Source of the DNA: Fonticula alba ATCC 38817 | Taxonomy: Eukaryota; Protista; Nucleariida | Direction: 5' to 3' (one strand) | Assembly: GCA_000388065.2 (NCBI GenBank) | Contig: KB932214.1 | Length of the DNA stretch: 52,725 nt | Made by a program: the position numbers and the translations under genes | Shown here: positions 16,601 through 46,502 of the stretch, piece after piece | Layout: the number at the start of each line of letters is the position of its first letter | Numbering within the stretch: the first letter of the stretch is position 1 | Notes under the pieces: model-generated | What the model saw: the letters and a program-made list of their open reading frames with translations, nothing else | Databases searched by the model: none | Told to the model about the DNA's origin: nothing

Positions 16601-19600
16601 CCCAGCTGGCCACGTGTCCCTTCCTGCCACGGGCCTTCTTCGACATCGGGGCCCGTGCCCAGGCCATCGTCAACTCCATCAGTTTGTTGAACTTCAGCAA
16701 TCTGGACCACTGGGTGGCCGGGCTGAATGCCCGGATGTCTGGCATTTTGCTGGAGCGCCTGCGCCTGGCGGTGCGTGCTTGGATTCATGTCTTCAGCCGG
16801 GAGGCTGTCGATGTGGATGCCGGGTCCGCGGGCCGGGGCCCGGCCGGTGGCGATCTCGATCCGGAGGACGAGGAGGCCGAGGCCGTGGCGGATCCGGTGG
16901 CACTGGCCGGCGCCGAGGAGGCCCTGCGTGGCATGCGCCAGCTGGTGCTGGAGCTGCTGCTGCGCAATCAGGTCATCTTCCTGGAGCCGCCTCTGGAGCA
17001 GGCCCGGTCGATGTGGATCACCGGGCTGTACACCTTCCTGAGCCCGGTGTGCCAGTTGGGCGTGCTGCGGTCGTCGGCGTTGGATCTGGCCGCCGGTGGG
17101 CCTGGGTCTCCGGCGGCGCTGCCGGGCCCCGGGGGCAGTGACGTGACGGCCGCCGGCGGTGCGGTCACCGCGGCCGGGGCCGGCGGCTCTGCCAGTGGTG
17201 CTGCCACTCAGGCGGCCACCTTCCGCTTCTTGCTGCGGGATTTGGTGGCCTCGGGCGAGCTTCAGGCTGCCTTTGAGGCGGTCGAGTCGAAGATCGCCAC
17301 GGTCGGGACGTATGTCGCGGATTGGCTGCGCTATCAGGCCCTGTGGGACCTGAATGAGGCCCATGTGGCTCAGCGTCTGTCCACCGATGTGGCCCTGTGG
17401 CGGACTCTGCTGGCGGACATTCGGAATGCCCGGTCGACCTTCGACACGTCGGAGTCCCGGCGGGAGTTCGGTGTGGCGGTGGCCATCGACTATGGCCACA
17501 TCCAGCAGAAGGTCACCTCGCGGTATGACGCCCTGCAGGCCAGCCTCCTGAATCACTTTGGTGGGCTGCTGCGCGAGAGCACCGGCACCCTGTTCGATCA
17601 GCTGGTGGAGGCTCGCCTGCAGTTGGAGGACTCGCGCTTGGGTTCCGCCGGGGCCGATGCCACCGGGCTGGCTGGTGCCAGTGGGGCGACCGGGTCCAGC
17701 GGTGGTGGCACCGCCGCGGCGATTGCCTGCGTGACCCTGGTGCAGGAGGTCAACCGTCGGGTGCCGGGCTGGGCCGCATCGCTGGATACGCTGAAGGGCT
17801 GCGAGGTCCTGCTCCGGCGTTTGCGCTTCCAATTCCCGGCCGGGTGGCTGTACTTCGAGCGGCTGGACTCCGAGTGGGAGGCCCTGCAGCTGACCCTGTC
17901 CAAGCGGAATGAGGAGATCAAGCGGCAGTTGGCGCCCTTGCAGGCGCGCATCACCGAGCAGGATGCCCATTTGCTGGAGCAAATCCAGGCCGCCGAGGCG
18001 GATTGGGCAGCCAACAAGCCGCTGCGCGGGGACACCCGGCCGGCGGCGGCGCTCACTGCGCTGGCTCAATTTGAGGCCACTTTCGGCCGGCTGTCGGAGG
18101 AGTGGATCCAGCTGGAGCGTGCCAAGGAGTCGCTGAATTTGCCGGCCGGCGGGGAGAACCGCGTGCTCTTCATGCTGGCCGAGTTGGAGGATCTGCGCCT
18201 GGTGTGGCAGGATCTGGCCAAGATTTGGGCGGCTCTGCGGGAGCTGGGCGAGACCCCCTGGGCGTCGATCCAGCCGCGCAAGGTGCGCCATGCGCTGGAG
18301 GATCTGTCCGAGGCGCTGCGCGCGCTGCCGGTGCAGCTCAAGCAGTATGCCGCCTTCGAGTATGTGCAGGCCGAGTTGCGGACCCTGCTGCGTGCGAATC
18401 TGGTCATCGGCGATCTGAAGGGCGATGCCATGCGTGAGCGCCATTGGCAGATGCTCTTCCGGCGCCTGCGTGTCGGGGAGCCCGGCGGTCCGGCCGGGCC
18501 TGGCAGTGCGACCGGCCTCGGCCGGCGTGTGGCCCTCGGGGACATCACCCTGCAGTTCCTTTGGGACTTGGGCCCGGCGCGCAATGAGGCCGCCATTCGC
18601 GAGGTGCTGGTGGTTGCCCAGGGCGAGCTGGCCCTGGAGGAGTACCTGCGCACGGTGGAGGAAACTTGGAAGGCCTTCGAGCTGGAGCTGGTCAATTACC
18701 AGAACAAGTGCTACCTCATCCGTGGCTGGGATGACCTGTTCAATCGGTGCAATGAGCACCTGAGCGCCCTGCAGGCGATGCGCATTTCGCCGTACTACAA
18801 GGAATTCGAGGGGACGGCCGCCACCTGGGAGGAGCGTCTGACTCGGGTGAATGCCATCTTCAATGTGTGGATCGATGTCCAGCGGCAGTGGGTGTACTTG
18901 GAGGGCATTTTCACCGGGTCCGCGGACATCCGGAATTTGTTGCCCACCGAGTCGGCCCGGTTCCAGTCCATCAACCAGGAGTTCCTGACCCTCTTGCGCC
19001 GGGTGGCCAAGGACCCGCAAGTGTTGGAGGTGATTGCCATCCCGAACATTGCGCGGTCGTTGGAGCGCCTGGCCGACATGCTGGCCAAGGTGCAAAAGGC
19101 CCTCGGTGAGTATTTGGAGAAGGAGCGCTCCTCCTTCCCGCGGTTCTACTTCGTCGGTGATGAGGACCTGCTGGAGATCATTGGCAATGCCAAGGATGCC
19201 AACAAGATCCAGAAGCACTTGAAGAAGATGTTCGCCGGGATTTCGGCCCTGGTGCTGGAGGGCGGCTCGACCGGGGCCACGCTGGCCGACAGCAGCCCGG
19301 CCGAGGGGGCCGGCGGGGAGGGCGCCGCATCGGCGACGACCGCCGGCACCGGGGCCCCGTCGGCCGATGCCGTGCCGACCGCCGTGCTGGGCATGGTCTC
19401 GCGCGAGGGCGAGACCGTGCCCTTCCGCACGCCGATCGACCTGCGCGCGCAGCCCAAGATCAATGAGTGGCTGGCTCAGGTGGAGCAGGAGATGCGCCTG
19501 TCGCTGGCGCACCTGCTGGATGAGTCGATCTTGGCCCTGTTGGCTCTGCAGCAGGGGGCCATCGATGTGGCCTTCGAGACGGCGGCCGGCATTGGGGCCT

Positions 19601-22600
19601 CCCCGGGCGGTCTTCCGGCCGTGGATGCTGCCGATGGTGGTGGGGCCGACTCGCCGGTGGTGGCGCTGGCCGTGGCCCCGGTGGGCGAGCATTTCGGCCA
19701 GGCGGCCTTCCTGGAGTGGGTCCAGCGCTTCCCGGCGCAGTTGGTGGTCATCGCGGCGCAGGTTGCCTGGACCACGCATGTGGAGCGGGCCCTGGCCCAG
19801 GGTGCCGGCGATGGCGATGCCGCTGGCCAGGCCCTCGGGGCGCTGCTGCGCTTTGTGGAGCATGTGCTGACGGTTCTGGCTGACACGGTCCTGCAGGATA
19901 TCGATGGATTGTATCGGCGCAAGTGCGAGCACCTGATCACGGAGATGGTGCACCAGCGCGACATCATCCGGCGGCTGGTGGCCGACCGGGTGACATCGGT
20001 CGGCTCCTTCGACTGGCTGTACCAGATGCGCTTCTACCATGATGCCCAGGGGGCGGACCCGCTGCGGCGGTTGGCCATCCGCATGGCCAATGCCTCTTTC
20101 GATTATGGGTTCGAGTATCTCGGCGTGGTGGACAAGCTGGTGCAGACGCCGCTGACGGACCGGTGCTACATGACCCTGACTCAGGCATTGGACTTGCGCC
20201 TGGGTGGTTCGCCCTTCGGCCCGGCTGGTACCGGCAAGACCGAGTCGGTCAAGGCCCTGGGCGCGCAGCTTGGACGCTTTGTGTTGGTGTTCTGTTGCGA
20301 TGAGACCTTCGACTTCCAGGCCATGGGCCGGATCTTCGTGGGGTTGTGCATGGTCGGCGCGTGGGGCTGCTTCGATGAGTTCAATCGTCTGGAGGAGCGC
20401 ATCCTGTCGGCCGTGTCGCAGCAAATCCAAACCATTCAGATGGCCCTGCGGGATCAGCGCGCATCCGGGGCCGCTGTCACCAATGAAATCGAGCTGGTGG
20501 GCAAGCAGCTGACCGTGCACCCGGGCACCGGGATCTTCATCACCATGAACCCGGGGTATGCCGGCCGGTCAAACCTGCCGGACAACTTGAAGAAGCTCTT
20601 CCGTGGCATGGCCATGACCAAGCCCGACCGGGAGCTCATTGCCCAGGTGATGCTCTTCTCGCAGGGGTTCCGGTCGGCCGAGCTGCTGGCTTCCAAGATC
20701 GTGCCCTTCTTCAACCTGTGCGCCGAGCAGCTGTCCTCGCAGCCGCATTATGACTTCGGCCTGCGCGCCTTGAAGTCGGTGCTGGTGAGTGCCGGTAACC
20801 TGAAGCGCGATCGGATTTTGTCGGCCACCGGGCCGGGGTCGGCCGATCGTGGCAATGCCGTGGCCCAGGCTTCCTCGGCCCTGGCCGAGCAGGAGATCCT
20901 CATCCAGTCGGTGGCCGAGACGGTGGTGCCGAAGCTGGTGGCCGAGGACATTGCCCTGCTGCGGAGCCTGCTGGAGGATGTCTTCCCCGGGGTGCCCTAC
21001 CGGCCGGCGGACACGCGTGCCCTGCGCGAGGCCATCGAGGCCATCTGTCGCGAGCGCCACCTGGTGGCGGCGGATGCCTGGGTGGACAAGGTCCTGCAGT
21101 TGTACCAGATCCACAAGATCAACCATGGTGTGATGCTGGTGGGCCCGGCGGCCACCGGCAAGTCCACCGCTTGGTCGGTGCTGCTGGCGGCCATGCGCCA
21201 GGTGGATGGCATCGAGGGTGTGGCGCATGTCATCGACCCGAAGGCCATTCCGAAGGAGGCCCTGTATGGGACGCTGGATCCGACGACGCGCGAGTGGACG
21301 GACGGCCTCTTTACGGGGATCCTGCGCCGGGTGCTGGACAATGTGCGCGGTGAATTGAACCGCCGCCAGTGGATCATCTTCGATGGTGACGTGGACCCGG
21401 AGTGGGTGGAGAACCTGAACTCCGTGTTGGATGACAACCGGCTGTTGACCCTGCCCAATGGCGAGCGCCTGTCCCTGCCGCCGAATGTGCGTGTCATGTT
21501 CGAGGTGCAGGATCTCAAGTATGCCACTCTGGCCACGGTGTCCCGCTGTGGCATGGTTTGGTTCAGTGATGATGTGGTGTCCCAGCCGATGGTGTATCAC
21601 CATTATCTGGCGGCCCTGGAGGCGGATGTCCTGCCGGGGATGGATGCCATGTTCGAGGGTGCCGGGCGTCGTGGTGGCACGGCGGCCACCACCGGGTCCG
21701 AGGGCGGCGACCTGCCGGCGGCCCTGGTGCTGCAGCGGGATTGCGCGCGCGTCTGGCGGCCGTACTTCGCGGATGAGGGGCTCGTGACGCAGGCCCTGCG
21801 CCGGGCGGCCGAGCTGGAGCACATCATGGAATTTTCCCCGGCTCGGGCGTTGCAAACGCTGTTCGCCATGCTGAACAAGACCGTGCGCAATGTCTTCGAT
21901 TACAACCAGTCGCATCCGGACTTCCCGCTGGCGGCCGACACCGTGGAGCGGTATTGCGTCCGGCGCCTGCTCTATTGCCTGGTGTGGGCCTTCTCCGGGG
22001 ATTGTCGCCTGCCTCAGCGTGATGTGCTTGGGGCCTTCCTGCTGGGCACGGCCGGTGTGGAACTCCCGGCCGGGAGCTCGGCCGCCCCTCCGTCGCTCAT
22101 CGATTACGAGGTCCAGGTGGCCTCCGGTGATTGGGGCCTCTGGCAGAACCGGGTGCCGGTGGTGGACATCGAGACGCACCGGGTCACGGCCCAGGATGTG
22201 GTCGTGCCGACGGTGGACACGGTTCGCCATGAGGATGTGCTGTACACATGGCTGGCGGAGCGTCGGCCACTGTTGCTGTGCGGGCCTCCCGGGTCCGGTA
22301 AGACCATGACCCTGTTCGCCGCGCTGAATGCCCTGCCGGATGTGGATGTGGTGGGGTTGAACTTCTCCTCGGCCACCACGCCGGAGTTGCTGCTGCGCAC
22401 CTTCGAGCAGTATTGCGAGTATCGCAAGACCCCGGCCGGGCAGATCCTGGCCCCGACGCAGCCCGGCAAGTGGCTGGTGCTCTTCTGCGATGAGATCAAC
22501 CTGCCGGAGCAGGACAAGTACGGCACTCAGCGGGTGATTTCGTTCATGCGGCAGCTGGTGGAGGCCGGCGGGTTCTGGCGTTGCCATGGGACCGGTGCGT

Positions 22601-25600
22601 CGGACCGGCAGTGGGTGCGCCTGGAGCGCATCCAAATTGTCGGTGCCTGTAATCCTCCCACCGATCCCGGGCGTGTGCCCTTGACCGGGCGCTTCCTGCG
22701 GCATTGCCCGCTGTTGATGGTGGACTACCCGGGCGAGACGTCGCTGCATCAAATTTACGGCACCTTCTGTCGGGCCCTGCTGAAGGCGGCTCCCAGTGGG
22801 TTGCGGTCCTTCGCCGAGCCCCTGACCCATGCCATGGTGGATGTGTATCTGGCCAGTCAGCGGCATTTCACCCCGGACCAGCAGGCGCATTACATCTACT
22901 CGCCGCGCGAGCTGACTCGCTGGGTGCGTGGTGTGTATGAGGCCTTGCGGCCGTTGGATGCGGCCGGGGTCCTGGCCGATGGGGAGTTCCTGGTGCGCCT
23001 GTGGGCGCATGAGGCCCTGCGTTTGTTCTCGGATCGCTTGGTGTCGGCCGAGGAGCGTGCCTGGACCGGTGCCCTGATCGATTCGGTGGCCGAGAAGCAC
23101 TTCGGTGCCGGTGTGAATCTGGTGTCGGCCCTGGCGCGGCCGATTCTCTTCTCGGACTGGCTGTCGAAGCACTATCTGCCGGTGGATCGCGAGCAGCTGC
23201 GCGAGTATATGAAGGCTCGTTTGCGTGTGTTCCACGAGGAGGAGCTGGATGTGCCGCTGGTGCTGTTTGACGATGTGCTGGAGCATGTGCTGCGCATTGA
23301 CCGGGTCTTCAAGCAGGTCCAGGGCCATGCGCTGTTGATTGGTGTCTCGGGTGCCGGGAAGACCACCCTCACGCGCTTTGTGGCCTGGATGAATGGCTTG
23401 ACCCTGTTCCAGATCCGTGCCCATGCGGCCTATAGCATGGAGGACTTCGATGACGATCTGCGGGATGTCCTCCGGCGGACCGGCTGCCGGGGGGAGAAGA
23501 TTTGCTTCGTCATGGACGAGGGGAATGTCCTGGACACGGGCTTCCTGGAGCGCATGAACACCCTGCTGGCCAATGGCGAAGTGCCGGGGCTCTTTGAGGG
23601 GGATGACCATGCGCAGCTGATGACCGCCTGTCGAGAGGGCGCCCAGCGTGAGGGGCTGCTGATTGACACGCCGGATGAGCTGTACCGGTGGTTCACCCAG
23701 CAGATCACTCGGAATTTGCATGTGGTGTTCACGATGAACCCGCCGGAGGGCGGCCTCGGTGGCCGGGCGGCCACTTCGCCGGCTCTCTTCAACCGCTGTG
23801 TGTTGGATTGGTTTGGCGATTGGTCGCCGCAGGCCCTGTACCAGGTGGGTTCGGAGTTGACGCATCGGTTGGACTTCGACGCGGCTGGGGGCCGGCAATT
23901 CGCGGTGCCCACCCAGTATGGGCCCTTCCCGCTGGCACATCCGGACCTGGGGCCGGTGATTGAATTGCCCCCCTCGCATCGGGAGTCGCTGGTCAATGCG
24001 CTGGTCTTTGTGCATGCCTCCCTGGGGGAGGTGTGTGCGCGTGTGGCCAAGCGCCATGGGCGTCTGTTGCACATTACGCCGCGCCATTTCCTGGATTTGA
24101 TTCATCACTTTGGGCGTCTCTTCGAGGAGAAGCGCTCGGAGTTGGAGGCCCAGCAGCTGCACATTAGCGTGGGCTTGAAGAAGCTTCGGGAGACCTTCGA
24201 CGCGGTGGCCGAGCTCCAGTCGACCCTGGCGGTGACCAGTGCCGAATTGGACCGGAAGAATGCCGAGGCCAATGCCAAGTTGCAGGAGATGCTGCAGCGG
24301 CAGCAGGAGGCCGAAAAGCGCAAGGTCGATTCGACGGCCATCCGCCGGGAGGTGGAGGAGTCCAGTCGGGTGATTGCCAGCCGCCATGAGGCGGTCATGG
24401 TGGACCTGGCCCAGGCGGCGCCGGCCGTGGAGGAAGCCCAGCAGGCGGTCAATGGCATCAAGAAGTCCCAGCTGACGGAGATCCGGTCTTTGCCGAATCC
24501 GCCGAAGGCCGTGTCGCTGGCCCTGGAGCCGGTGTGCTTGATGCTGGGCGGCGGCCCGGCCGGTGGCGGGGCCATCACCTGGCAGACCATCCAGCAGACC
24601 CTGCGCCGGGAGGACTTCATCACGTCGATTGTCAATTACAACACGGAGAAGCAGCTGACGGCCGGCGTGCGGGAGCACATCCGCACGCGGTACCTCAGCA
24701 ATCCGGATTACAACTTCGAGGTGATCAACCGCGCGTCGAAGGCTTGCGGCCCGTTGGTCAAGTGGGTGCAGGCCCAGTGCAGCTATTCCACCATTCTCCA
24801 GCGTGTGGAGCCCCTTCGCCAGGAGGTGGCCGAGTTGGAGGCGGCCGGCGAGTCGGCGCGCGTGCAGCTGGCCGAGGTGGAGGCCACCATCGCCGAGCTG
24901 GAGCAGTCGATTACTCGCTTCAAGGATGAGTATGCCACATTGATTGCGGAGACCCAGGCGCTGAAGGCCCAGCAGGAGACCGTTCGGGCAAAGGTGACCC
25001 GGGCAACCGGGCTGCTGGATTCCCTGCAGTCGGAGCGTGCGCGCTGGTCGGAAACCTCCTCGACCTTCGAGCAGCAGATGACCACCCTGGCCGGTGATGC
25101 GCTGGCATGCGCGGCGGCCGTGGCCTATTCCGGGTTCTTTGATCAGACCCATCGGCAGTTGCTCTTCCGCCGGTGGCTGGCGCATCTTCGTCGGTCGGGC
25201 ATCGCCACGCGGGCCGACCTGTCGGTGACGGAGTATCTGTCCACGGCGGATGAGCGGCTGGCGTGGCAGGCGCGCGGCCTGCCGGCCGACGACCTGGCCA
25301 GCGAGAATGCCGTCATGCTGACGCGCTTCAACCGGTACCCGCTGATGATCGATCCGTCGAGCCAGGCCCGGGCCTTTGTCCTGCGGCAGCTGGCCGACCG
25401 GAAGATCCAGCACACATCCTTCCTGGACAAGTCCTTCGTCAAGAACCTGGAAGCGGCCTTGCGCTTTGGGAATCCGCTGCTGGTGGACGATGTGGAGGCG
25501 CTGGATCCGATCCTGAATCCGTTGCTGAATCGCGAAGTCCGCCGGGCCGGTGGCCGGGTGCTGGTGCGCGTGGGCGCCCAGGATGTGGACTTCTCGCCGG

Positions 25601-28600
25601 CCTTCTCGCTGTTCCTGGTGACCCGCGACTCGAGTGCCCTCTTTGGGCCGGATCTCTGCTCGCGGGTGACCTTCGTCAACTTCACCGTGACTCGGGCTTC
25701 ATTGCAGAGCCAGTGCCTGTATAGTGTGCTGCGCGCGGAGCGGCCGGACATCGAGCAGAAGCGCACGGATCTGCTGCGCATGCAGGGCGAGCTGCAGACT
25801 CGTTTGCGGCACCTGGAGCGGGCCCTGCTGGAGGCCCTCAATGCGGCCGAGGGGTCGATCCTGGAGAGTGACTCGGTCATCACCACGATGGAGGCCCTCA
25901 AGCGGGAGGCGAGCGAAATCGCCGGGCGCATTTCCGAGACCGATTCCATGCGCGATGAGGTGGAGGCCGTGACGGCCGAGTATACCCCCTTCGCGGCGGC
26001 CTGCTCGGCGGTCTTCTTCACCATGGAGCAGCTGAACCAGCTGCATCCGTTCTACCAATTCTCGCTGGACATGTTCATGGAGATCTTCAACCATGTGTTG
26101 GCCAGTGTCGGCCCGGCGGCGGCTACTGCTGTTGCTAGCACGGGCACCGGGCAGGATGCGCCGGCTGCGCGTCTGGCCCGGCTGACGGAGCAGCTCTTCC
26201 GGACGGCCTTCCGCCGGCTGTCGTCGGCCCTGCTGCACAGCGACCAGCTGACCTTGGCCATGCTCCTGGCGCGGCCCTTCGCCCGGGCCACGGGCCAATC
26301 GCTGGATGAGGATCTGTATGACTTCCTGATTCGGAATGTGACGGCCGCTGCCGGGGCCGGTGCTTCGGCCGGTGCGGACACCGGGTCGTCCTCGGCCGGC
26401 GGGCTGGTGTCCTCGCTGGAGGCGCGCCTGGATGGGGCGGCGCGTGGCCTGGTGGCCACCTTGGGGCTGGCGCCCTCGTCGGATCGGCTGGCGCAGCTGC
26501 GCGAGTTGCTGGCCCTGCCGGCCTTCGCCGGGCTGCCGGCCAGTGTCACCGCCGACCCCGAAGCCTGGGGCGCCTTTGTGCGTGGTGCCGGTGCGCCGGA
26601 GGTGGCGGTGCCGGCCGGGGCCTGGGACCTCGGGGCGGCCAGCCCGGATGCGTCGGCCGAGGAGCCGCTGCCGGCCAGGCAGGCCGCCGTGGTGGAGGCC
26701 CTGCTGGCGGCGGTGCTGGTGAAGGTCCTTCGTCCGGACCGGGTGTCGCCGGCGTTGGAGCGCTTCTGCGGGCTGCTGTTCGGGGAGCACTTCCTCCAGC
26801 AGCCGGAGCAGCAGGCTCGCCTGCAGGAGGTGGTCCTGCGGGAGGTGACCGCTCGGACGCCGGTGGCCCTGTGCTCGGTGCCGGGGTTGGATGCCTCCTT
26901 CCGGGCGGAGCAGCTGGCACGCGACCTGAAGCGCCCGCTGCGGGCCATTGCCATCGGCTCGCCGGAGGGCTTTGCCCAATCGGATCAGGCCATTTTGGCG
27001 GCGGTCAAGGCCGGCACGTGGGTCCTGCTGAAGAATGTGCACCTGGCGCCGCAGTGGCTGTCGCAATTGGAGAAGCGCCTGCATGCGCTGACGCCGCATG
27101 CGGACTTCCGGCTGTTCATGACCATCGAGGTGGTGCCGCAAATCCCGGCATCCATCCTGCGCCTGTCGCGCATCTTCATGTACGAGCGGCCGCCCGGCAT
27201 GAAGGCCAACATTTTGGAGACGCTGGCGGACTTGCCGGCCGAGCGCATCGGCCAGCAGCCGGTCGAGCGTGCCCGGCTGTTCTTCCTGCTGGCCTGGGTC
27301 CATGCCATCATCCAGGAGCGCTTGCGGTACGCGCCGATCGGCTGGACCACGGCCTACGAGTTCAATGACGCCGATCGCCGGTGTGCCTTCGATGTGATCG
27401 ATGGGTGGGTGGATCGCGTGGCGCAGGGTGTCCGGACCAACATCTCGCCGGAGTCCATCCCCTGGAGTGCGTTGCGCACGATCCTGGCCGAGTCGGTGTA
27501 TGGCGGTCGTGTGGACAATGACTTCGATCAGCGCACCCTGGCGGCCTTCATTCGGCAGGTCCTCTCGGCGGCTTCCTACGATCCGGAGTACATGCTGGTG
27601 GCGGCCGGGCATGAGGGGGCGACCGCGGGCGACATGGGCCCCGGGGAGGATGCCTCCTCGGTGGCCGGGCTGCGCGCGCCCACCGGCACCACCATGCAAG
27701 CCTTCCTTGGCTGGGTGTCCGAGCTGCCGGACCGCCAGCCCCCGACGTGGCTCGGTCTGCCGGCCGACGCGGACAACCTCCTGCTGACGCAGGTGGGTGG
27801 CCAGCTGCTGGGCAAGCTCCGTGCCATGGGCGGCTTGGATGAGGATGACGAGGCCCTGGAGACGGTGGACGACATGCTGGCGGCGGCCACGGCGGCCGCT
27901 GGCCATGTGGCTGCCGGATCGACCGAGGCCGGGCTGGATGCCTCGCTGCCGGGCTGGATGCGTGCGATTGCCGGTCGTGCGCAAACCTGGCTCGGGGTGC
28001 TGCCGGAGGCCATTGCCCCGGTCGATCGGACCGCCGGGAATGGGCCCATCTTCCGGTGCCTGGAGCGTGAAGTGCGCAATGGCAGCCGGCTGTTGCGCAC
28101 GGTGCGCGGCGATCTGGCGGAGCTTGTGGCCATTGTGGCCGGCACCGCCAAGCAGACCAACCACTCGCGGTCGCTGCTGCGGGACTTCTCGCGGGATGCG
28201 GTGCCGGCGTCGTGGCGGCGGTTCCACACCTCGCCGCCGGGCATCTCCCTGGATGCCTGGCTCGGGGACTTTGCCCGTCGTTGCGGGCAGTTCATTGCCC
28301 TGGCTGGGAGCCCGGCGGCCTGGAGCGGCAATGGCGGCTCGGCTGGTGGGGATGCCTCGGGCTTCCCCATCTGGCTGGGTGGCCTGCTGGCGCCGGAGGC
28401 CTTCCTGACTGCCTCGCAGCAGGCCGTGGCCCAGGCCCGGGGCTGGTCGCTGGAGGAGCTGCAGCTGTCGTTGGAGTTCCTGCCCGAGGCCGAGGGGACC
28501 TCGGCTGCCGGGGAGGATGTGGCGGCGGCGGCGGCTGCTGCGCGCGCACGCGATCTGGCCTCGCCCGGGACCTTCCTCCTGTCGGGCATTCGTCTGGAGT

Positions 28601-28857
28601 GTGCGGTGGTGGCGGCGGCCGGCACCGGCCAGGTGGTTCCTGGCCCCTCGCACGGGGCGGCCATTGGCCTTGTCCGGCTGTGCTGGCACCAGCGCGCCGG
28701 CGTGGTCCTGCCGGCCGATGCCATTCAGCTGCCGGTGTACCTGAACTCGGCGCGCAAGCAGCTTCTCTTCTCCACCTGGCTGTCGTCCAGCATGACGGCG
28801 CCGGTGGCCTACCAGCGCGGTGTGGCGCTCACCTGCTCCGATGTCAAGTCCACCTAG
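12767..28857 (+). CDS. DYNC1H1: Cytoplasmic dynein-1 heavy chain, 3 exons, about 5013 aa
   Basis: Exons 12767-13079, 13798-14574, 14906-28857 join in phase (15042 nt). P-loops are AAA1 GPAGTGKT (20218-20241), AAA2 GPAATGKS (21142-21165), AAA3 GPPGSGKT (22282-22305) and AAA4 GVSGAGKT (23341-23364). Other motifs are WGCFDEFNRL, RFYFVGDEDLLEIIGN, the stalk/MTBD IKKSQLTEIRSLPNPPKAV and the tail SPYEMLHSYIHNAVSPYF. The start could instead be ATG 12797. Both introns contain N-gaps. Confidence 0.96.
13384..13640 (+). repeat. Copy B of the ~240-nt direct repeat, inside dynein intron 1
   Basis: Starts right after N-gap 13151-13380 and matches 12278-12530. Confidence 0.9.
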
Positions 28858-29075
28858 TGTGCTTCCTGCGGCCTGCCTCCTTTTCGGCCCGATCCCTTGC
28901 AAATAACATCTTCTTTTGCCTCCGGCCGGTGTTTCATTTGTTTTCCTGCTGGCTGGGGTCTATTCTTTTTTCTTTTCTCTTTTTTCCGGCGGCGCCCCCG
29001 CACACGCCGTAGGGGTGGCTGGGAGGGGCAGGTGCGGGAACCTGCGGCACATGTCCTGTGCCGATACGTACACAC

Positions 29076-29230
29076 GCACAGTCGCACAGTCGGGTCGCAC
29101 AGTCGGGTCGCACAGTCGGGTCGCACAGTCGCACAATTGCAGAGTCGCACAGTCGCACAATCGCACAATCGCACAATCGCACAATCGCACAATCGCACAA
29201 TCGCACACACACACACACACACACACACAT
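29076..29230. repeat. Compound minisatellite: 13-mer GTCGCACAGTCGG x3, 8-mers GTCGCACA and ATCGCACA x6, then (CA)n
   Basis: Read directly. It lies between the dynein stop codon and the Hook-domain gene stop codon. Confidence 0.9.
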
Positions 29231-29438
29231 ACAAGTACACACGCACACACAGACAGACAGCGAAAGGGAATGCATGGACATTGCCCAGGGCGCAGTGTGG
29301 GAGCCAGGTCACACGCTGCATGGTCCCCGGGGCCGAGATCACGGCCCACGCTTGCACCCTCGCGCGGGGCGCGCCTGACAGCCGATGCCGGTGTGCGAGG
29401 AAAGCAAGTTTATTCCGCATGGGGGTGTGGGGAAACAT

Positions 29439-32400
29439 CTATTGCGACAGGGCGGGGTCGCGGCGCTTCTTTTTCACCGAGATGGAGATCCTCTTCTTCC
29501 AGGAGAGGGCGGGGTCCATTTCCGGGGCCGAGGTGGCCGGGTTTTCGGCACTGGCATGCAGTCCACCGGGCGGGGGGGACACGGTGCCGAGGCCGAGGCT
29601 GGCACTGGCCGCGCTGCTGACACTACCACGCCGGTCCTGCCGGCCATGATCGCCCCCCTCGGCGCCGGTGTGGGCAACGTCAAAGTCGGCCTCGCGGTCG
29701 TGCAGGAAGGAACACGGCGGCGGCACGACCATGGCCGCGGTGGTGGACGGAGTAGTGGCCGATGGCCCCCCGGCCGGGATCCCGGCGAATCGCCCCTCGG
29801 AGGTGGGCTCCTCGATGATGGTGGTGTGCATGGAAGCCGCGGAGGAGTCCTCCGACATGCGCCGGGGCTCGGAGCTGGCGCCGGGCCAGCCGGAGCCCAT
29901 GGAGGTCCCGCCCGGAGGCGAGAAGGATCCCTCATTGAAGGAGGAGCGCGTGGATGACCGAGCCATGCTGAAAGACCAGTTGCCACTGCGCTTGCGTGAG
30001 CCGCCAGCTCCGCCGGAAGACGAGGACAAGGAGGAGGAGGAGGAGGAGGCGGGGTCCGTTGTGTCGCTCAGGCCGCGCGGGTGCACCGCGTAGCCGGCTC
30101 GCTCCTCGGGACCGGGGTCGCCCATGGGCAGGGCATTTTGCGTGTGCCCGGCCGCAAAGCCCCCATGCAGGTGATGCGAGCTGGCCGAGTGATTGCGCTT
30201 GAACCAGGGACCGGCCGATGGTTGGGGCTGCGGCTGGTGCAGGGCCGATCCGCTGCCGAGGGCCGAGCCCGGAGACGAGAGCGACGGCTGCGAATGGAAG
30301 ACCCCGGCCCCGTCCGGCCCGACATGATGATGGTGATGGTGGTGCTGGCGAAAGAAGCTGCCACTGGAGGAGCTACTCTTGCGGGAGGAAGGCTCCTCAT
30401 ACTGGTTGAAGGTGCCGCTGGAGTAGGAGCTCCCCGAGTGAGTCCGGGTGAGGGGCCGGCCACCGGCCGAGGGCCGGCCTGCATCCGGCACCGGTGTCCC
30501 AGCCGACGAGTGTTTCGAGGAAGAGGGGCGCAGGAGACTGGTGAAGCGCTTGGCCAGTGAGCCAGCCGAGCCGGTGGACATGCCGAGGAGCTTCTCCTTG
30601 CGGTATGCACGCTTGGGCTCCAGGCGCTCGGGGGTCTGGCGCAGAGCAGGGCATGCCAGAAGGTCGGGCATGAGCGGGAAAGAGAGCGGAGGAGGGAGGG
30701 GGGTCAGAGGGATACAGGGGCGGGGAGATGTGAGGAAGGACGCCTCGCCAGAGAGAGAGATGGGGGAGAGAGAGGGGGAGGGAGGAGGGGAGGGAAGAGA
30801 GAGGGGGAGGGAGAGAGGGGAGGGGAGAGAGATGGGGAGAAAGAAAGAAAGAGAGAGAGAAAGAAAGAAAGAGAGAGAAAGAAAGAAAGAGAGAGAAAGA
30901 AAGAAAGAGAGAGAAAGAAAGAAAGAGAGAGAAAGAAAGAAAGAGAGAGAAAGAGAGAGAGAAAGAAGGAAAGAGAGAGAGAAAGAAGGAAAGAGAGAGA
31001 GAAAGAAGGAAAGAGAGAGAGAAAGAAGGAAAGAGAGAGAGAANNNNNNNNNNNNNNNNNNNNNNNNNNNNNNNNNNNNNNNNNNNNNNNNNNNNNNNNN
31101 NNNNNNNNNNNNNNNNNNNNNNNNNNNNNNNNNNNNNNNNNNNNNNNNNNNNNNNNNNNNNNNNNNNNNNNNNNNNNNNNNNNNNNNNNNNNNNNNNNNN
31201 NNNNNNNNNNNNNNNNNNNNNNNNNNNNNNNNNNNNNNNNNNNNNNNNNNNNNNNNNNNNNNNNNNNNNNNNNNNNNNNNNNNNNNNNNNNNNNNNNNNN
31301 NNNNNNNNNNNNNNNNNNNNNNNNNNNNNNNNNNNNNNNNNNNNNNNNNNNNNNNNNNNNNNNNNNNNNNNNNNNNNNNNNNNNNNNNNNNNNNNNNNNN
31401 NNNNNNNNNNNNNNNNNNNNNNNNNNNNNNNNNNNNNNNNNNNNNNNNNNNNNNNNNNNNNNNNNNNNNNNNNNNNNNNNNNNNNNNNNNNNNNNNNNNN
31501 NNNNNNNNNNNNNNNNNNNNNNNNNNNNNNNNNNNNNNNNNNNNNNNNNNNNNNNNNNNNNNNNNNNNNNNNNNNNNNNNNNNNNNNNNNNNNNNNNNNN
31601 NNNNNNNNNNNNNNNNNNNNNNNNNNNNNNNNNNNNNNNNNNNNNNNNNNNNNNNNNNNNNNNNNNNNNNNNNNNNNNNNNNNNNNNNNNNNNNNNNNNN
31701 NNNNNNNNNNNNNNNNNNNNNNNNNNNNNNNNNNNNNNNNNNNNNNNNNNNNNNNNNNNNNNNNNNNNNNNNNNNNNNNNNNNNNNNNNNNNNNNNNNNN
31801 NNNNNNNNNNNNNNNNNNNNNNNNNNNNNNNNNNNNNNNNNNNNNNNNNNNNNGGGGGGGGGGGCGGGAGGCGAGACCGAGGGAGAGAGAGAGAGAAGGA
31901 AAAAAGGGCGACTGGCGGGGAAGCGCACGTTCGGCCGGGGTGGTGGGAGTGGAATCGGCGTGCTGCCGGGGCTGGGAAATAACACAAGAGAGGACCAGGA
32001 GGCAGATCTTCCGGAGCTCGGTGATGCCGGCATACTTGTCGGCGAAGTGGCCTCCGCGGATCCCGGCACCAGGGCTGGAGCCGGGACCCGTGCGCGGCTG
32101 CATTTTCAGCGAGAGGCGCCGCGCAAGGGCGCTTTTTTCGGACTGCTCGGTCACAAGGTGCGAGTGGGGAGCAAACTTCGACCACCAGTCGGGGTAGGTG
32201 GCAAGCCGAGAGGCCAGCACCAGATCCGGCTCCCAAGGGAGTCGCCGACCGAGCACGTCATTGAAGTACGATCGGACGGACTTCATGACACTGTGGGAAG
32301 GTCAGAGAGAGAGAGAGAGTATGTGTGTGTGTGTGTGTGTGTGAGTGTGTGTGGGTGTGTGAGTGTGTGTGGGTGTGTGTGTGGGTGAGGGTGTGTGTCT

Positions 32401-32918
32401 GTGTCGGGACCGAAGGGACGGGCGGGAGGGGGCCGAAAGGGGCTGGAGAGGATCGCGTCGGCAACGGCAACAGATCCGTGCATACCTGAGGAGGTTGTAG
32501 AAAAAGAGAATCCAATCGGTGGACGAGGAGAAGTCCCCGGTCAGAGACAGGGACGAGGCCTGGCCCATTGTGGGTGCCAGGGATCGGGGATCCTCCAGAA
32601 GATCGATTTGGTGTGCTGGATGGCTGGGCGATTCGGGGGGCGGGGCGGGGGCGGGGGAGGATCAGAGGCTGGAAGCGGGCAAAGCGGCGTCGCGCCACCT
32701 GCAGACGGAGTCGAGGCACGGGGAGCACGGGCAGCGCACAGCTCGGTCATGGCAGCGGCCAGGGCGTGGCCATTGGAAAGGGCCAGGAATCGGCGAAGGT
32801 CCCCCTCGGCCTCATTGAACAGCAGGCCAGATGGCAAAACCGAGGACTTGGGGAAGGAGTCGAGCCAGCTCTCCAGCGCCAAGAGCTGGGTCAATTTGAG
32901 ATGCTGAAAGGAGGACAT
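29439..32918 (-). CDS. Protein with Hook-type calponin-homology N-terminal domain and Ser/Gly-rich disordered C-terminus; middle interrupted by an N-gap
   Basis: Exons (minus) 32699-32918, 32486-32615, 31929-32290 join in phase and give LALESWLDSF...LALSNGHALAAAMTEL...DWILFFYNLLSVMKSVRSYFNDVLGRRLPWEPDL...ITELRKICLLVLSCVI, which by eye aligns to the HOOK N-terminal domain. A terminal open segment 29439-30635 (399 codons) is Ser-rich. The phase mismatch across the gap (31044-31853) implies a missing exon or two separate genes. Confidence 0.6.
30838..31043. repeat. Purine-only GAAA/GA compound microsatellite running into an N-gap
   Basis: Repeated aaagaaagaaagagagag and gaaagaaggaaagagagaga units. 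Confidence 0.9.
31044..31853. other. Largest assembly gap (810 N). Other gaps: 2148-2304, 13151-13380, 14645-14884, 35510-35613, 38926-39270, 39883-40239, 42495-42689, 51898-51922
   Basis: N runs, almost all abutting poly-C/G or dinucleotide repeats. Gap sizes are assembler estimates. Confidence 0.98.
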
Positions 32919-43362: not shown

Positions 43363-44865
43363 GGGTGGTTTGTGCATCATCAGGAGCCCGCAGGTTCCTG
43401 CCCGCGCACGGCACCGGGCCTTGCGCCGCACATGTGGCCCATATTCCAGGTGTGGAGGGGGATTGCGAACCGCGGGGAGGAGAGCCGCCTGGAGGCTTCC
43501 ACACCTTGGCTGGCGACCTGGCCGAGGGCGGGTGAGACATCGGGCCCATGTCGCCCTGTGCCGGCCGACAGAAAAGCGCGCGAGCGCGGGTGTGGTCGGC
43601 CCTCCGGCGGTGCCCGGAGCCCGAGCGGTGGACCAAGCTCGCTCCGTGGCCACATGCTGCCGCCTTGCGCCGCCCGGTCGTTGGCTTTCGGGTCAACGCC
43701 CTTCGGCTGAGCGAGCGAGCGAGCGAGCGAACCAGCGAGCTTGGCCCCTGGAGCAGGCGGCGTGGTGAGCCGGCGAGGGGGCGGGGCGGTGGGGGGGGGG
43801 GGGGGGGCTCATGCCTTCGCGCGCCAAAGTGCGGGAGAGGCCTCTTTTTCCCGCGCTTCTCCATTCGGCTGGTGGAGAGGCGCGCACCCGAGCATCTCTC
43901 GGGGGGCTTCGGGCATGTCGGCGGCCCTCCCCTCCCTTTGGGCCCAGGGAGCTGCCGCTGTGGCATTTGTTCCGCGGGCATTCTTCGGGGCACCGGCGCC
44001 GCCTGTCCGGCGGTGTGCCGACCTCTCTCTCTCTCTGGGTGCCCTTGGGCTCCGTCAGTCCTGCCGTTCCGGCGGCGGGGGCTCCTGTTTCGGGCCCTCC
44101 CCCTGGCCCGGGCGCACTCGGCCAGAGGGGGGGGGGACTCGACGCGGGCGCCTTTTTGAAAAGCGCCTGATCAGTCAAAGACAAGGGTGGGCAGGTCTCC
44201 GGGGAGAGGAACGTGTCCCACTGTTCCCGCTGGCCCTGCTTCGGAGGGCGGCATTCTTCCCCACCGCCGCTTTTTCTGGGGGCATGACCGGCGCCACCTG
44301 GTTGCCCCCCCCCCCCCCCCCCGGCCCCCCCGCACCAATGTGCATCGTCCTGCTGACTGGCATATGCCTTGCTTTCCGGCCGAAAGGGGCGACCCGCCCA
44401 GGTTGGTGTGAAGGGAGCCAGTGTTCCCGTTGTCCCCCGCCCCCGCCCCCCTCGATGTCCTGCGATAGTGCGCCCGTTGGTGCGTGTGTGTGTGTGGGGG
44501 GGGGGGGGGCCGGAGCCGGGCCCTTCCTTGCCCGCTTTGTCCCGCCAGGCCGCGAAGGCGGGTCTATTTGCGTGTCCGAGCACCACGGGTCCTCCTGAAC
44601 ATATGACAAGAACCTACGGCAGGCGCGGGATTCTAAATGCGGCGCATGATCCGATGAAATACGGTGATCCGGCCTCTGCCAGTCGGGGCAACGGCCCCTC
44701 CGGGGGATGTTCCCCCCGGGGGGCGGGGGGCACGCGAATGGAGGCCAAATGTGAGGCCCTCTGTGTTGGGATGGGCAAGACCCAAGGGGCGGGGCTCGGA
44801 GCATGCTCGGCGGGGCGCCCGGCCCCCGGAGGAGGCCCGAGTAGGTTGACACCAGGGAGACAGCG

Positions 44866-44870
44866 AGAGC

Positions 44871-44920
<50 letters not shown>
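44866..44920. repeat. (GA)n microsatellite upstream of PDCD5
   Basis: A nearly uninterrupted gagaga run. Confidence 0.9.
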
Positions 44921-44925
<5 letters not shown>

Positions 44926-45080
44926 CTTCATCGAGGGGAGGGACGATCTGCATCGTCGGTGCTTGCTTTTCGGCCGGCGCAAGGGCAAAGGGGCCCGGCA
45001 GCCCCAGGCAGATCCCCTTCTCCTTCTTCCACTCTATCTGTCCCCCCCCCCCTTACTCCCCTTTCTGTTTGCCAATCACC

Positions 45081-45867
45081 ATGGACGACCTCTCCAACCT
45101 CCCTGCCGGCCTGTCTGCCCAGCCCCCCGGCGGCGACGGCGGCGACGCCGAGAGCAAGGCCCGTCTCAAGGCCCAGGAGGATGCCCGCCTGGAGATGATT
45201 CACCAGATCCTGACTCCGGATGCCCGGGAGCGCCGTACGTGCCCCTTCTTTCCCGCCCCCTCCTCCTCCCCCCCCTCCCTCCCTTCCCCTCTCTCTTCTT
45301 CACACACCCATGTGCCCGATCCATGGCCCTCCTGCGTGGGCCGGCCTCCACGCATGTGGGACGGGCGCCGTGGGAGGAGCGGGGCAAGGGGCTGAGGGGC
45401 AGCTGGGCCATGCACTCGCCCAGATGTGGGCATGTGTCTCTTTCCCTTTCCGGGCCATACACTAACCGGCGACCGTCGCGCCTCGCTTTGTACCCAGTCA
45501 ACCGCATTGCCGTCGTGCGCCCGGACAAGGCGCGTGGTGTGGAGGACCTGCTGGTCAAGATGGCCCAGTCCGGGCGTCTTGGTGGTCGGGTGTCTGAGCA
45601 GCAGCTGGTTGGCATGCTGGAGCAGATCAGCGAGCAGACTGGCTCCACTCGTGAGACCAAGATCAAGGTGCGTGGCCTGTACTCTCCTTCCTCCTCCCGC
45701 CCCCCCCCCCCCCCCCCCCCCCGCTTTGGCTCCATCGCAGCCAGGGCATACATGGCTGCTTTATGTCTCCCCTTTACTGATGATCCCCGTGTGGCGGGTG
45801 CCTGCAGTTCTCCCGTCGCGGTGACGATGACGATGACGATTGGGAGGCCGACCTCTTCAAGGACTGA
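45081..45867 (+). CDS. PDCD5: Programmed cell death protein 5 (dsDNA-binding domain), 3 exons, 127 aa
   Basis: Exons 45081-45234, 45498-45667, 45808-45867 give ...QEDARLEMIHQILTPDARERLNRIAVVRPDKARGVEDLLVKMAQSGRLGGRVSEQQLVGMLEQIS...KIKFSRRGDDDDDW. The ILTPDARERL..IA.V.P.KA pattern is characteristic. Confidence 0.93.
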
Positions 45868-46502
45868 GGGCGGATTTCCCGGCCGACCTGGGCGCAAGCG
45901 CGCACCGCTCCCCCGCCCGTGCCCCAGCCGTACTCCTTCTCCCCCGGGGGAGTAAACGCATCCTGGATGCGGGTCGCGATGCGGCCGGGCATATGGCCCA
46001 TTTCCGGATCCTCCCATGTGTGGGCAGCGGCTGCGGCGATGTCGATGCAGCGCCACTGGCGCCACATCATCCTCCAAGACAATATAAAGACGCAAAGCAA
46101 CACCAGGCACAAGGGGGGTGCACGGACGCAGGGCATACAGAGTGCCGCGACACAAGTGCCCCCCCCCCCCCCCCAGGCATGTGTCGGTTCTATTCGCCCC
46201 CCCACTCCCCCATGAACACCCACACACACCCACAGACACGCGGACGAAGTCACATCCGTTTATTTGGGAGGGGAGAGGTAGACGCGTATGCGCGCACTCG
46301 GAGAGGGGGGGGGGGGGGAGGGGGACAATTGGTCTTAGAGATGGCTTTCGCCCATCTCTCGCTGTGCTTGTTCCCAGCCCCCCTCTCGCGGAGAGCATGC
46401 ATCGGATTGCACACGGTCCTCCTCCCTCCCTCCCCGCGGTTGAGATGGGGGGGGGAAGGGGTGTGGGAGAGGAAAGAGCCAAGCGGCCAATGGGGGCAGC
46501 GC

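What the first reader, a model, noticed from the sequence alone, without database searches (positions are those of the whole stretch)
31929..32918. Divergent Hook-type CH domain hidden across three small exons, apparently without room for a full Hook coiled coil
Seen in sequence: three phase-consistent exons give L..WL.SF, LSNGHALA, DW...NL..V.K.V..YF.DVLG..L...PDL and ELRKI..LVL.C.I, plus an ~60-aa insert after the PDL motif. No single ORF in the six-frame track shows this. Established: the same pattern characterises the N-terminal Hook domain of HOOK1-3, CCDC88 and fungal HookA/Hok1. That domain binds dynein light intermediate chain and is normally followed by several hundred residues of coiled coil that engage dynactin. 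Inference: the visible downstream coding sequence is a Ser/Gly-rich disordered segment. The 810-N gap could encode at most about 270 aa even if fully exonic, so this may be a truncated or rewired Hook-domain protein, such as a decoy, regulator or short adaptor. The helices that bind LIC would fall exactly at the gap edge.
Basis: partly seen in the sequence, partly recalled or inferred. Interest (0 to 1): 0.7.

Follow-up and report, generated by a model that had tools for sequence, protein, structure and literature searches.

The report
Unannotated, possibly Hook-like gene start
Three small, well-supported coding exons next to the dynein heavy-chain gene look like the start of a very divergent Hook-type dynein-adaptor domain.

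Summary
On the minus strand, three exons (32918-32699, 32615-32486, 32290-31929) give the quoted motifs and total 237 codons. They are joined by GT..AG introns with consistent phases. Codon usage picks the proposed frame in each exon.

The Hook reading is only partly supported. Searched exon by exon, the sole Pfam hit is HOOK_N at E 0.22 (11.7 bits). That is noise level: exon 2 hits antibody light chains at E 0.11. No homologue turned up in 1.84 billion representative proteins, the PDB, metagenomes or the organism's own genome. The gene appears unannotated.

New facts:
- The genome has an ordinary multi-exon Hook with a long coiled coil on another contig.
- The Ser-rich ORF downstream is a separate 410-aa public gene model with its own ATG.
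- The 810-N gap is flanked on both sides by the same purine-only simple repeat, so it probably holds little coding sequence.
- The LIC-binding helix H is not in the visible sequence.

No RNA data were found. "Truncated Hook" stays open but unproven. Interest is modest.

The parts
32699..32918 (-). Exon 1: ATG plus 73 codons and 1 nt. Carries LESWLDSF and LSNGHALA. Ends at donor CAG|GTGGCG.
   Evidence: Codon log-odds +0.19 per codon against about -1.0 to -1.1 in the other minus-strand frames. Upstream of the ATG all frames score -0.8 to -1.1.
32616..32698 (-). Intron 1: 83 nt, GT..AG, phase 1.
   Evidence: All frames score low.
32486..32615 (-). Exon 2: 130 nt. Starts HQID and ends DWILFFYNLL. 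Donor CAG|GTATGC.
   Evidence: Codon log-odds +0.14.
32291..32485 (-). Intron 2: 195 nt, phase 2. Holds a (GT)n/(GA)n microsatellite, a CTGAC branch-like site and a CCCACAG acceptor.
   Evidence: Codon log-odds -1.1 to -1.6 in all frames.
31929..32290 (-). Exon 3: 361 nt. Carries SYFNDVLG..PDL, a 57-residue insert, then ELRKICLLVLSCVI and a Pro-rich tail. Candidate donor AAC|GTGCGC at 31928 (phase 1).
   Evidence: HOOK_N E 0.22 on residues 89-108. Codon log-odds -0.02, with the insert at -0.34 and its flanks at +0.14 and +0.19.
31854..31928 (-). Pyrimidine-rich tail after the candidate donor, running into the gap. Probably intron or 3' non-coding sequence.
   Evidence: 92% purine on the + strand next to the gap. 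Codon log-odds -0.49.
31044..31853 (.). Assembly gap of 810 N. It hides whatever follows exon 3.
   Evidence: All nine gaps in the window sit in homopolymers or simple repeats.
30745..31043 (-). Simple repeat on the far side of the gap, made only of C and T on the minus strand. No coding signal.
   Evidence: All frames score negative.
29439..30671 (-). Neighbouring gene, not shown to belong to this one. A 410-aa Ser/Gly/Pro-rich protein (P0002) with its own ATG. Its stop codon faces the end of the dynein gene.
   Evidence: An exact 410-aa protein exists in the public collection. No Pfam family. S+G+P is 41% and the longest P/G-free run is 19 residues.

Best explanation
This is the 5' part of a real, unannotated protein-coding gene on the minus strand. 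Its first 237 residues most likely form a very divergent Hook-type calponin-homology domain.

Compared with animal Hooks it has three insertions: about 13 residues, about 10-16 residues, and 57 residues. It is a second, lineage-specific Hook-domain gene. The organism's ordinary Hook, with a long coiled coil and the conserved C-terminal motif, lies on another contig.

The gene breaks off in an assembly gap that sits in a long simple repeat. The next gene starts 1.26 kb further on. So what follows the domain is probably short (at most about 270 residues, likely much less) and cannot be a Hook-length coiled coil.

Shown:
- the exons, phases, splice signals and coding bias;
- single copy in the genome;
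- absence from public protein sets;
- the ordinary Hook elsewhere;
- the separate downstream gene model.

Inferred:
- the Hook-type fold;
- that the gap is mostly repeat;
- any function.

If the fold is right and a helix H lies in the gap, the protein would dock on the C-terminal helix of the dynein light intermediate chain. Without a coiled coil it could not bridge to dynactin. It would then act as a non-activating binder or carry the domain for another partner.
For: Gene reality:
- Phase-consistent GT..AG introns whose signals resemble those mapped in the same genome.
- The frame-specific codon bias switches at the splice sites and lies at or above the extreme of non-coding frames. It equals that of the true Hook's domain exons (-0.20 to +0.42) and of P0002 (-0.04).

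Hook likeness:
- The only Pfam family hit for any exon is HOOK_N, at the right end of the profile (positions 102-121 of 146).
- The genome's genuine Hook does barely better exon by exon: one of three tested exons hits, at 16.6 bits, and mouse Hook1 in the PDB matches only at E 0.53. A weak score is therefore expected.
- The mouse Hook1 segments printed (LTNGVTMAQVLHQID; ILGCAVNCEKKQ) line up with LSNGHALAAAM...HQID and LVLSCVISQPRQ.
- From my memory of human HOOK3, the W-to-Y spacing of 17 residues is kept exactly across the predicted exon 2/3 junction. That recollection agrees with all ten residue numbers quoted in PMC4970328. The Met-to-W distance is 17 residues here against 18 in HOOK3.

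Short remainder:
- 1258 nt lie between exon 3 and the ATG of P0002, an exact public 410-aa model.
- Both gap flanks are purine-only on the + strand.

Partner:
- A dynein light intermediate chain gene is present, and the dynein-1 heavy chain lies next door.
Against: - No statistically significant match to Hook or any CH family by any allowed test.
- Exons 1 and 2, and all sub-exon pieces, give nothing in Pfam or match nothing Hook-like in the PDB.
- E 0.22 is at noise level, since exon 2 hits antibody light chains at E 0.11. At about 12 bits, a few chance HOOK_N hits per six-frame genome are expected: one search gives E 0.75 for 13.8 bits.
- phmmer of exon 3 against 1.84 billion representatives found no Hook.
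- No detectable similarity to the genome's own Hook (all z below 1.5).
- Fragment folds were uninformative.
- Helix H, the LIC-binding element, is not in the visible sequence.
- No RNA evidence that the exons are joined or expressed.
- The gap size is only an estimate.
Confidence: 0.5

Rival explanations
1. A real gene, but the Hook resemblance is chance. The exons encode an orphan, lineage-specific helical domain unrelated to Hook or CH domains.
For: - No significant profile, sequence or fold match in any search.
- Chance hits of equal strength occur.
- No similarity to the genome's own Hook.
- No relatives anywhere.
- The match needs three insertions.
Against: - HOOK_N is the only Pfam family hit, and it falls at the expected profile position.
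- Six motifs lie in Hook order starting at the N-terminal Met. Register is kept across a splice junction that was set by independent signals.
- A true Hook in this genome is nearly as invisible exon by exon.
Confidence: 0.25
2. An ordinary long coiled-coil Hook-family adaptor whose body is missing only from the assembly. Either the gap is under-sized, the scaffold join is wrong, or the rest sits on an unplaced contig.
For: - The gap length is an estimate.
- This assembly breaks inside genes at simple repeats. The dynein gene itself is cut at 14645-14884 inside an intron.
- Contig C112 begins inside a long repetitive coiled-coil ORF that has lost its N-terminus.
Against: - Both gap flanks carry the same simple repeat, which suggests one repeat tract.
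- The flanks are joined in one scaffold.
- A Hook-size coiled coil needs well over 2 kb here; the genome's own Hook spans about 4.1 kb.
- Nothing links C112 to this locus, and its ORF ends in a membrane anchor unlike Hooks.
- No second helix-H-like match exists in the genome (low sensitivity).
Confidence: 0.1
3. Not a functional gene. Either a decaying remnant of a duplicated Hook 5' end cut off by repeat expansion, or spurious open frames in GC-rich DNA.
For: - Unannotated in public protein sets.
- No RNA evidence.
- No stop codon or 3' end is visible. The reading frame runs into a repeat that cannot encode stops on this strand.
- The insert has weaker codon bias, -0.34.
Against: - 237 codons over three exons without a stop or frameshift.
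- Intact ATG and splice signals.
- Codon bias as good as in annotated neighbours.
- No sequence similarity to the resident Hook that would mark a recent duplicate.
Confidence: 0.1

Closest known systems
Hook family dynein adaptors (HOOK1-3, fungal HookA/Hok1). Solved Hook domains include mouse Hook1 (PDB 1wix) and the human HOOK3 structure described in PMC4970328.
   Same: - An N-terminal position starting at the Met.
- The order of motifs: W motif, L-S-N-G turn, HQID, W..L...NL, Y..D.LG, PD, and the E-L-x-K...L-x-L-x-C helix.
- The only Pfam hit is HOOK_N, on that last helix.
   Different: - Three insertions, the largest 57 residues between the PDL and ELRKI motifs.
- No visible helix H. This is HOOK3 aa 132-158, the LIC1 site with Q147 and I154 (PMC4970328).
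- No coiled coil and no C-terminal cargo region at the locus.
- Scores are far below family thresholds.
The same genome's canonical Hook gene (G000:C8, about 1724100-1728240, minus strand; L010 5097-9238)
   Same: - Both are multi-exon genes that split the N-terminal domain over small exons with short GT..AG introns.
- Donors are similar: GTGCGC, GTGCGT, GTATGT.
- Both are weakly detected exon by exon.
   Different: - The C8 gene has a helix H exon that hits HOOK_N (E 0.0068) and Hook1 1wix.
- It has several hundred residues of coiled coil and the C-terminal REQRMMAVAWYDL-type motif.
- There is no detectable pairwise similarity to the window's exons.
- Intron positions do not coincide.
CCDC88 proteins (girdin, Daple)
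   Same: They carry a Hook-type N-terminal domain with the same motif order (from my own knowledge, not tested here).
   Different: They are followed by more than 1000 residues of coiled coil and, to my knowledge, are restricted to animals. Nothing of that kind is at this locus.

Membership tests
Hook family / Pfam HOOK_N (PF19047) | The N-terminal domain scores above the HOOK_N gathering cut-off (23.5 bits). | tested here: inconclusive
   Tested exon by exon only. Exon 3 scores 11.7 bits, E 0.22, on profile positions 102-121. Exons 1 and 2 and all sub-pieces give nothing. A true Hook exon from this genome reaches only 16.6 bits.
Hook family | Helix H after the CH core: the LIC1-binding surface, HOOK3 aa 132-158 with Q147 and I154 (PMC4970328). 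| tested here: inconclusive
   Not present in the visible sequence. After ..CVISQPRQHA, exon 3 turns Pro-rich, and profile positions 122-146 are unmatched. It could lie in the 810-N gap.
Hook family | Several hundred residues of dimerising coiled coil after the domain. | tested here: inconclusive
   None is visible. 1258 nt separate exon 3 from the next gene's ATG, 810 of them N and most of the rest simple repeat. P0002 is 41% S+G+P with no P/G-free run above 19 residues. A wrong gap size would change this.
Hook family | A conserved C-terminal cargo-binding region. | tested here: not met
   Nothing like it lies downstream on this strand as far as the dynein gene. The C8 gene has it.
Calponin-homology (CH) fold | A seven-helix CH fold that superposes on solved CH or Hook domains. 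| tested here: inconclusive
   Only fragments could be folded. Exon 1 (pLDDT 71) came out as a generic three-helix bundle. It had no Foldseek match and best Z 5.6 to unrelated helical proteins. Exon 3 had pLDDT 44. The joined fold was not run.
CCDC88 (girdin/Daple) | A Hook-type domain followed by a very long coiled coil. | tested here: inconclusive
   No coiled coil is visible at the locus and there is little room for one if the gap size is right.

The most novel reading that the evidence does not exclude
A naturally short Hook-domain protein. It would have a Hook-type LIC-binding head with no dynactin-spanning coiled coil, either alone or fused to a Ser-rich disordered tail, and is encoded beside the dynein heavy-chain gene. 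It would act as a non-activating LIC binder that tunes or competes with the canonical Hook and other adaptors.
Probability: 0.12. Interest if true: 0.6.

Novelty: new variant of a known kind. Interest (0 to 1): 0.35.

Why it matters
If confirmed, this would be a second, highly diverged Hook-domain gene in a deep-branching relative of fungi. It might lack the coiled coil that all known Hook and CCDC88 proteins use to activate dynein-dynactin. That would be a natural test of what the Hook head does on its own.

As it stands, the practical value is smaller:
- An unannotated gene has been found at an assembly gap.
- The organism's ordinary Hook has been located.
- Exon-by-exon family scans have been shown to miss even true Hook exons in this genome.

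Tried and rejected
**Searches that found nothing useful**
- Pfam on whole exons and on seven sub-exon pieces: only HOOK_N at E 0.22.
- PDB sequence search on exons 1, 2, 3 and two pieces: nothing Hook-like. Exon 2 hits antibody light chains by chance.
- phmmer of exon 3 against 1.84 billion representatives: one spurious repeat protein, P0001.
- ESM Atlas feature search on exons 3 and 1: no usable hit.
- Own-genome search with exons 1 and 3: single copy.
- Metagenome scans with exons 3 and 1: no relatives.
- Word search around exon 1: no public protein of 137-436 aa.

**Other attempts**
- I tried to fetch Hook family members through the paralogue's coiled-coil exon, to build my own profile. Nothing came back, so no custom Hook profile could be made.
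- Smith-Waterman of the window's exons against the paralogue's exons, with shuffles: all z below 1.5.
- Single-exon AlphaFold models with Foldseek and VIA-align: only generic helical matches.
- Sequencing runs: none holds the stretch. Only G-runs were laid, and repeats at 31854-31907 and 32295-32409 were skipped.
- The look-up of encoding contigs for P0002: withheld.

**Alternative gene models considered and rejected**
- An intron that removes the 57-residue insert: no donor, acceptor and branch site combine well.
- A 64-nt intron (GTATGC at 32035 to CCCAG at 31972) that would delete the ELRKI helix: the region has the best in-frame codon bias of exon 3 and carries the Pfam hit.
- A direct splice from exon 3 into P0002: phase mismatch at every plausible acceptor.

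The joined-exon search and fold were left out.
Full report
**What is there**

The feature lies on the minus strand. Translation in the three minus-strand frames, with a list of GT and AG sites, gives three exons:
- Exon 1 is 32918-32699. It starts at an ATG and carries LESWLDSF and LSNGHALA.
- Exon 2 is 32615-32486. It starts HQID and ends DWILFFYNLL.
- Exon 3 is 32290-31929. It carries SYFNDVLGRRLPWEPDL, a 57-residue insert, ELRKICLLVLSCVI, and then a Pro-rich tail.

The phases fit: exon 1 ends in phase 1 and exon 2 in phase 2. No single ORF shows the pattern.

**Is it a gene?**

I trained a codon log-odds on the first 9 kb of the neighbouring 4646-codon dynein ORF and calibrated it on the held-out rest.
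- The three exons score +0.19, +0.14 and -0.02 per codon.
- All other frames and the opposite strand score -0.5 to -1.7.
- Non-coding frames of the held-out dynein sequence average -1.0. Their 95th percentile is -0.07 to -0.23 at these lengths.
- The domain exons of the genome's true Hook score -0.20 to +0.42. The annotated neighbour P0002 scores -0.04.
- The best frame switches where the introns are placed, and it collapses upstream of the ATG and inside both introns.

The splice signals are GTGGCG and GTATGC donors, CATCCAG and CCCACAG acceptors, and a CTGAC site before the second acceptor. They resemble those I mapped in five exons of another gene of the same genome: donors GTGCGC, GTGCGT, GTATGT and GTCAGC, and acceptors CACAG, CCCAG, CTCAG and GACAG. 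I take the exons as real coding sequence with about 85% confidence.

No RNA evidence could be had. No public run holds the stretch, and laying four runs gave only G-run matches.

**Is it a Hook domain?**

The joined search and the joined fold were therefore left out.

Exon by exon, the evidence is thin:
- Pfam gives a single family, HOOK_N, for exon 3. It scores E 0.22 and 11.7 bits against a 23.5-bit cut-off, and matches residues 89-108 to profile positions 102-121 of 146.
- Exons 1 and 2 and seven sub-exon pieces give nothing.
- PDB sequence searches give nothing for exons 1 and 3 or for two pieces of exon 3.
- Exon 2 hits antibody light chains at E 0.11. This shows what chance produces at this level.
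- At about 12 bits, a few chance HOOK_N hits per six-frame genome are expected. One search gives E 0.75 per genome for 13.8 bits.
- phmmer of exon 3 against 1.84 billion representatives returned only a repeat-inflated false hit.
- The Atlas gave nothing, and metagenome scans gave nothing.
- Single-exon AlphaFold models were uninformative. Exon 1 (pLDDT 71) folded as a generic three-helix bundle, with no Foldseek match and best Z 5.6 to unrelated proteins. Exon 3 had pLDDT 44.

**Calibration with a true Hook**

A search of the organism's own genome with HOOK_N and HOOK found a canonical Hook on contig C8, at L010 5097-9238 on the minus strand.
- Its N-terminal domain is split over five small exons.
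- It has several hundred residues of coiled coil.
- It ends with the REQRMMAVAWYDL-type C-terminal motif.

Even this gene is nearly invisible exon by exon. Only its helix-H exon hits HOOK_N (E 0.0068, 16.6 bits) and mouse Hook1 1wix (E 0.53). Two other domain exons give nothing in Pfam, and one of them, tried against the PDB as well, gave only a chance hit. A weak exon-level score therefore does not count against the window's gene, but it does not prove anything either. The two genes show no pairwise similarity, and the window's gene is single copy.

**Why I still favour a Hook-type domain, at about 55-60%**

- The Hook1 segments printed (LTNGVTMAQVLHQID and ILGCAVNCEKKQ) line up with LSNGHALAAAM...HQID and LVLSCVISQPRQ.
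- My recollection of human HOOK3 residues 68-157 agrees with all ten residue numbers quoted in PMC4970328: N68, W69, K77, D102, E108, I136, I139, M142, Q147 and I154. Against it, the stretch from DW to ..VLGRRL aligns without a gap. The W-to-Y distance is 17 residues in both, across the exon 2/3 junction, which was placed on splice and codon evidence alone.
- The Met-to-W distance is 17 residues here against 18 in HOOK3.

This comparison rests on memory and on inspection, not on a tool score. My rough estimate is that it would be worth about 13 bits pairwise after penalties for re-entering the alignment at each gap. That is suggestive but not significant at database scale.

**What follows the domain**

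After ..CVISQPRQHA, exon 3 becomes Pro-rich. A donor like others in this genome (AAC|GTGCGC, phase 1) sits at 31928, followed by a pyrimidine run into the gap. Helix H is HOOK3 aa 132-158, and it carries the LIC1 contacts Q147 and I154. HOOK3 1-160 binds LIC, while 1-239 assembles dynein-dynactin but is immotile (PMC4970328). Helix H is not in the visible sequence.

All nine gaps in the window sit in homopolymers or simple repeats. The one in the dynein gene lies in an intron. This gap has purine-only sequence on the + strand on both sides: 340 nt on the left and about 50 nt on the right. It is therefore probably mostly repeat.

Beyond the gap lies a 410-codon Ser/Gly/Pro-rich ORF.
- An identical 410-aa protein starting at the ATG at 30671 exists in the public collection, so annotators treat it as its own gene.
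- The candidate acceptor upstream of its ATG, and those in its first 40 codons, all need a phase-0 donor, whereas the exon 3 donor is phase 1.
- It has no Pfam family and no stretch that could be coiled coil.
- Pyrimidine-rich sequence also precedes the ATG at 32918, so such tracts may mark 5' regions here. That rests on two examples and is an inference.

So at most 810 nt, probably far fewer, remain for the rest of the gene. A Hook-length coiled coil does not fit unless the gap size or the scaffold is wrong. Contig C112 starts inside a long repetitive coiled-coil ORF that lacks its N-terminus, but nothing ties it to this locus.

**Annotation and context**

- No public protein contains exon 3 at any length or exon 1 within 137-436 aa. 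The gene appears unannotated.
- It lies 3.1 kb from the end of the cytoplasmic dynein heavy chain ORF at 14917-28857 (DHC_N1 E 5e-58), with P0002 in between.
- The genome also has a light intermediate chain gene. FHIP was not detected, which is inconclusive.
I did not verify the name, though the 31.3-Mb size and high GC fit my memory of that genome.

**Verdict**

- The Hook reading is plausible but unproven.
- The 'truncated Hook' idea is consistent with the space available but rests on a gap.
- The Ser-rich segment is probably a different gene.
- This is a modestly interesting lead that needs the joined-sequence profile and fold, transcripts, and a closed gap.

Noticed in passing
window 14917-28857 (+), continuing upstream across the gap at 14645-14884: A cytoplasmic dynein heavy chain is encoded as one uninterrupted 4646-codon ORF (DHC_N1 E 5e-58). 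The gap just upstream lies inside an intron: GTATGT..polyC..N..polyC..CCTCAG. The gene converges on P0002 and sits 3.1 kb from the Hook-like exons.
   Followed up: partly
G000:C8 about 1724100-1728240 (-); L010 5097-9238: The genome's canonical Hook gene. It has five small domain exons (a 9238-9197, b 9113-9025, c 8890-8803, d 8716-8594, e 8448-8341), long coiled-coil exons and a C-terminal REQRMMAVAWYDL motif. Its YxxE.LG region is less canonical than the window's gene.
   Followed up: partly
window 29439-30671 (-): P0002 is a 410-aa Ser/Gly/Pro-rich protein with a run of seven His. It has no Pfam family and no relatives among proteins of comparable length (226-718 aa) in the public collection, and it is annotated as its own gene.
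   Followed up: partly
L008 = G000:C112:1-2855: The contig starts inside a long, highly repetitive Ala/Glu/Leu coiled-coil ORF built of AERDAL..HAAL-type units. The ORF ends in a hydrophobic, anchor-like segment. Its N-terminus is lost at the contig edge, and a 10-N gap sits inside the repeats.
   Followed up: no
window 28900-29300: Between the converging stop codons of dynein and P0002 lies a tandem repeat that reads ..CDCAIVRLCDCAIVRL.. in one frame, next to (GT)n runs. It is probably non-coding 3' sequence.
   Followed up: no
window 32488-32613 (-): Exon 2 gives a chance PDB hit to antibody light-chain N-termini (E 0.11, LTQSPASLAVSLGQ-like). It is a useful marker of the noise level of exon-sized queries.
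   Followed up: yes
window 10188-11273 (+), 44369-45952 (+), 49839-51311 (-): Ordinary neighbouring genes: a class I methyltransferase, a PDCD5-like dsDNA_bind domain protein and an ABC transporter ATPase.
   Followed up: no
G000:C1:3146310-3147290 (-): A dynein light intermediate chain gene (DLIC, best exon E 1e-7). It is the expected partner of Hook domains.
   Followed up: no
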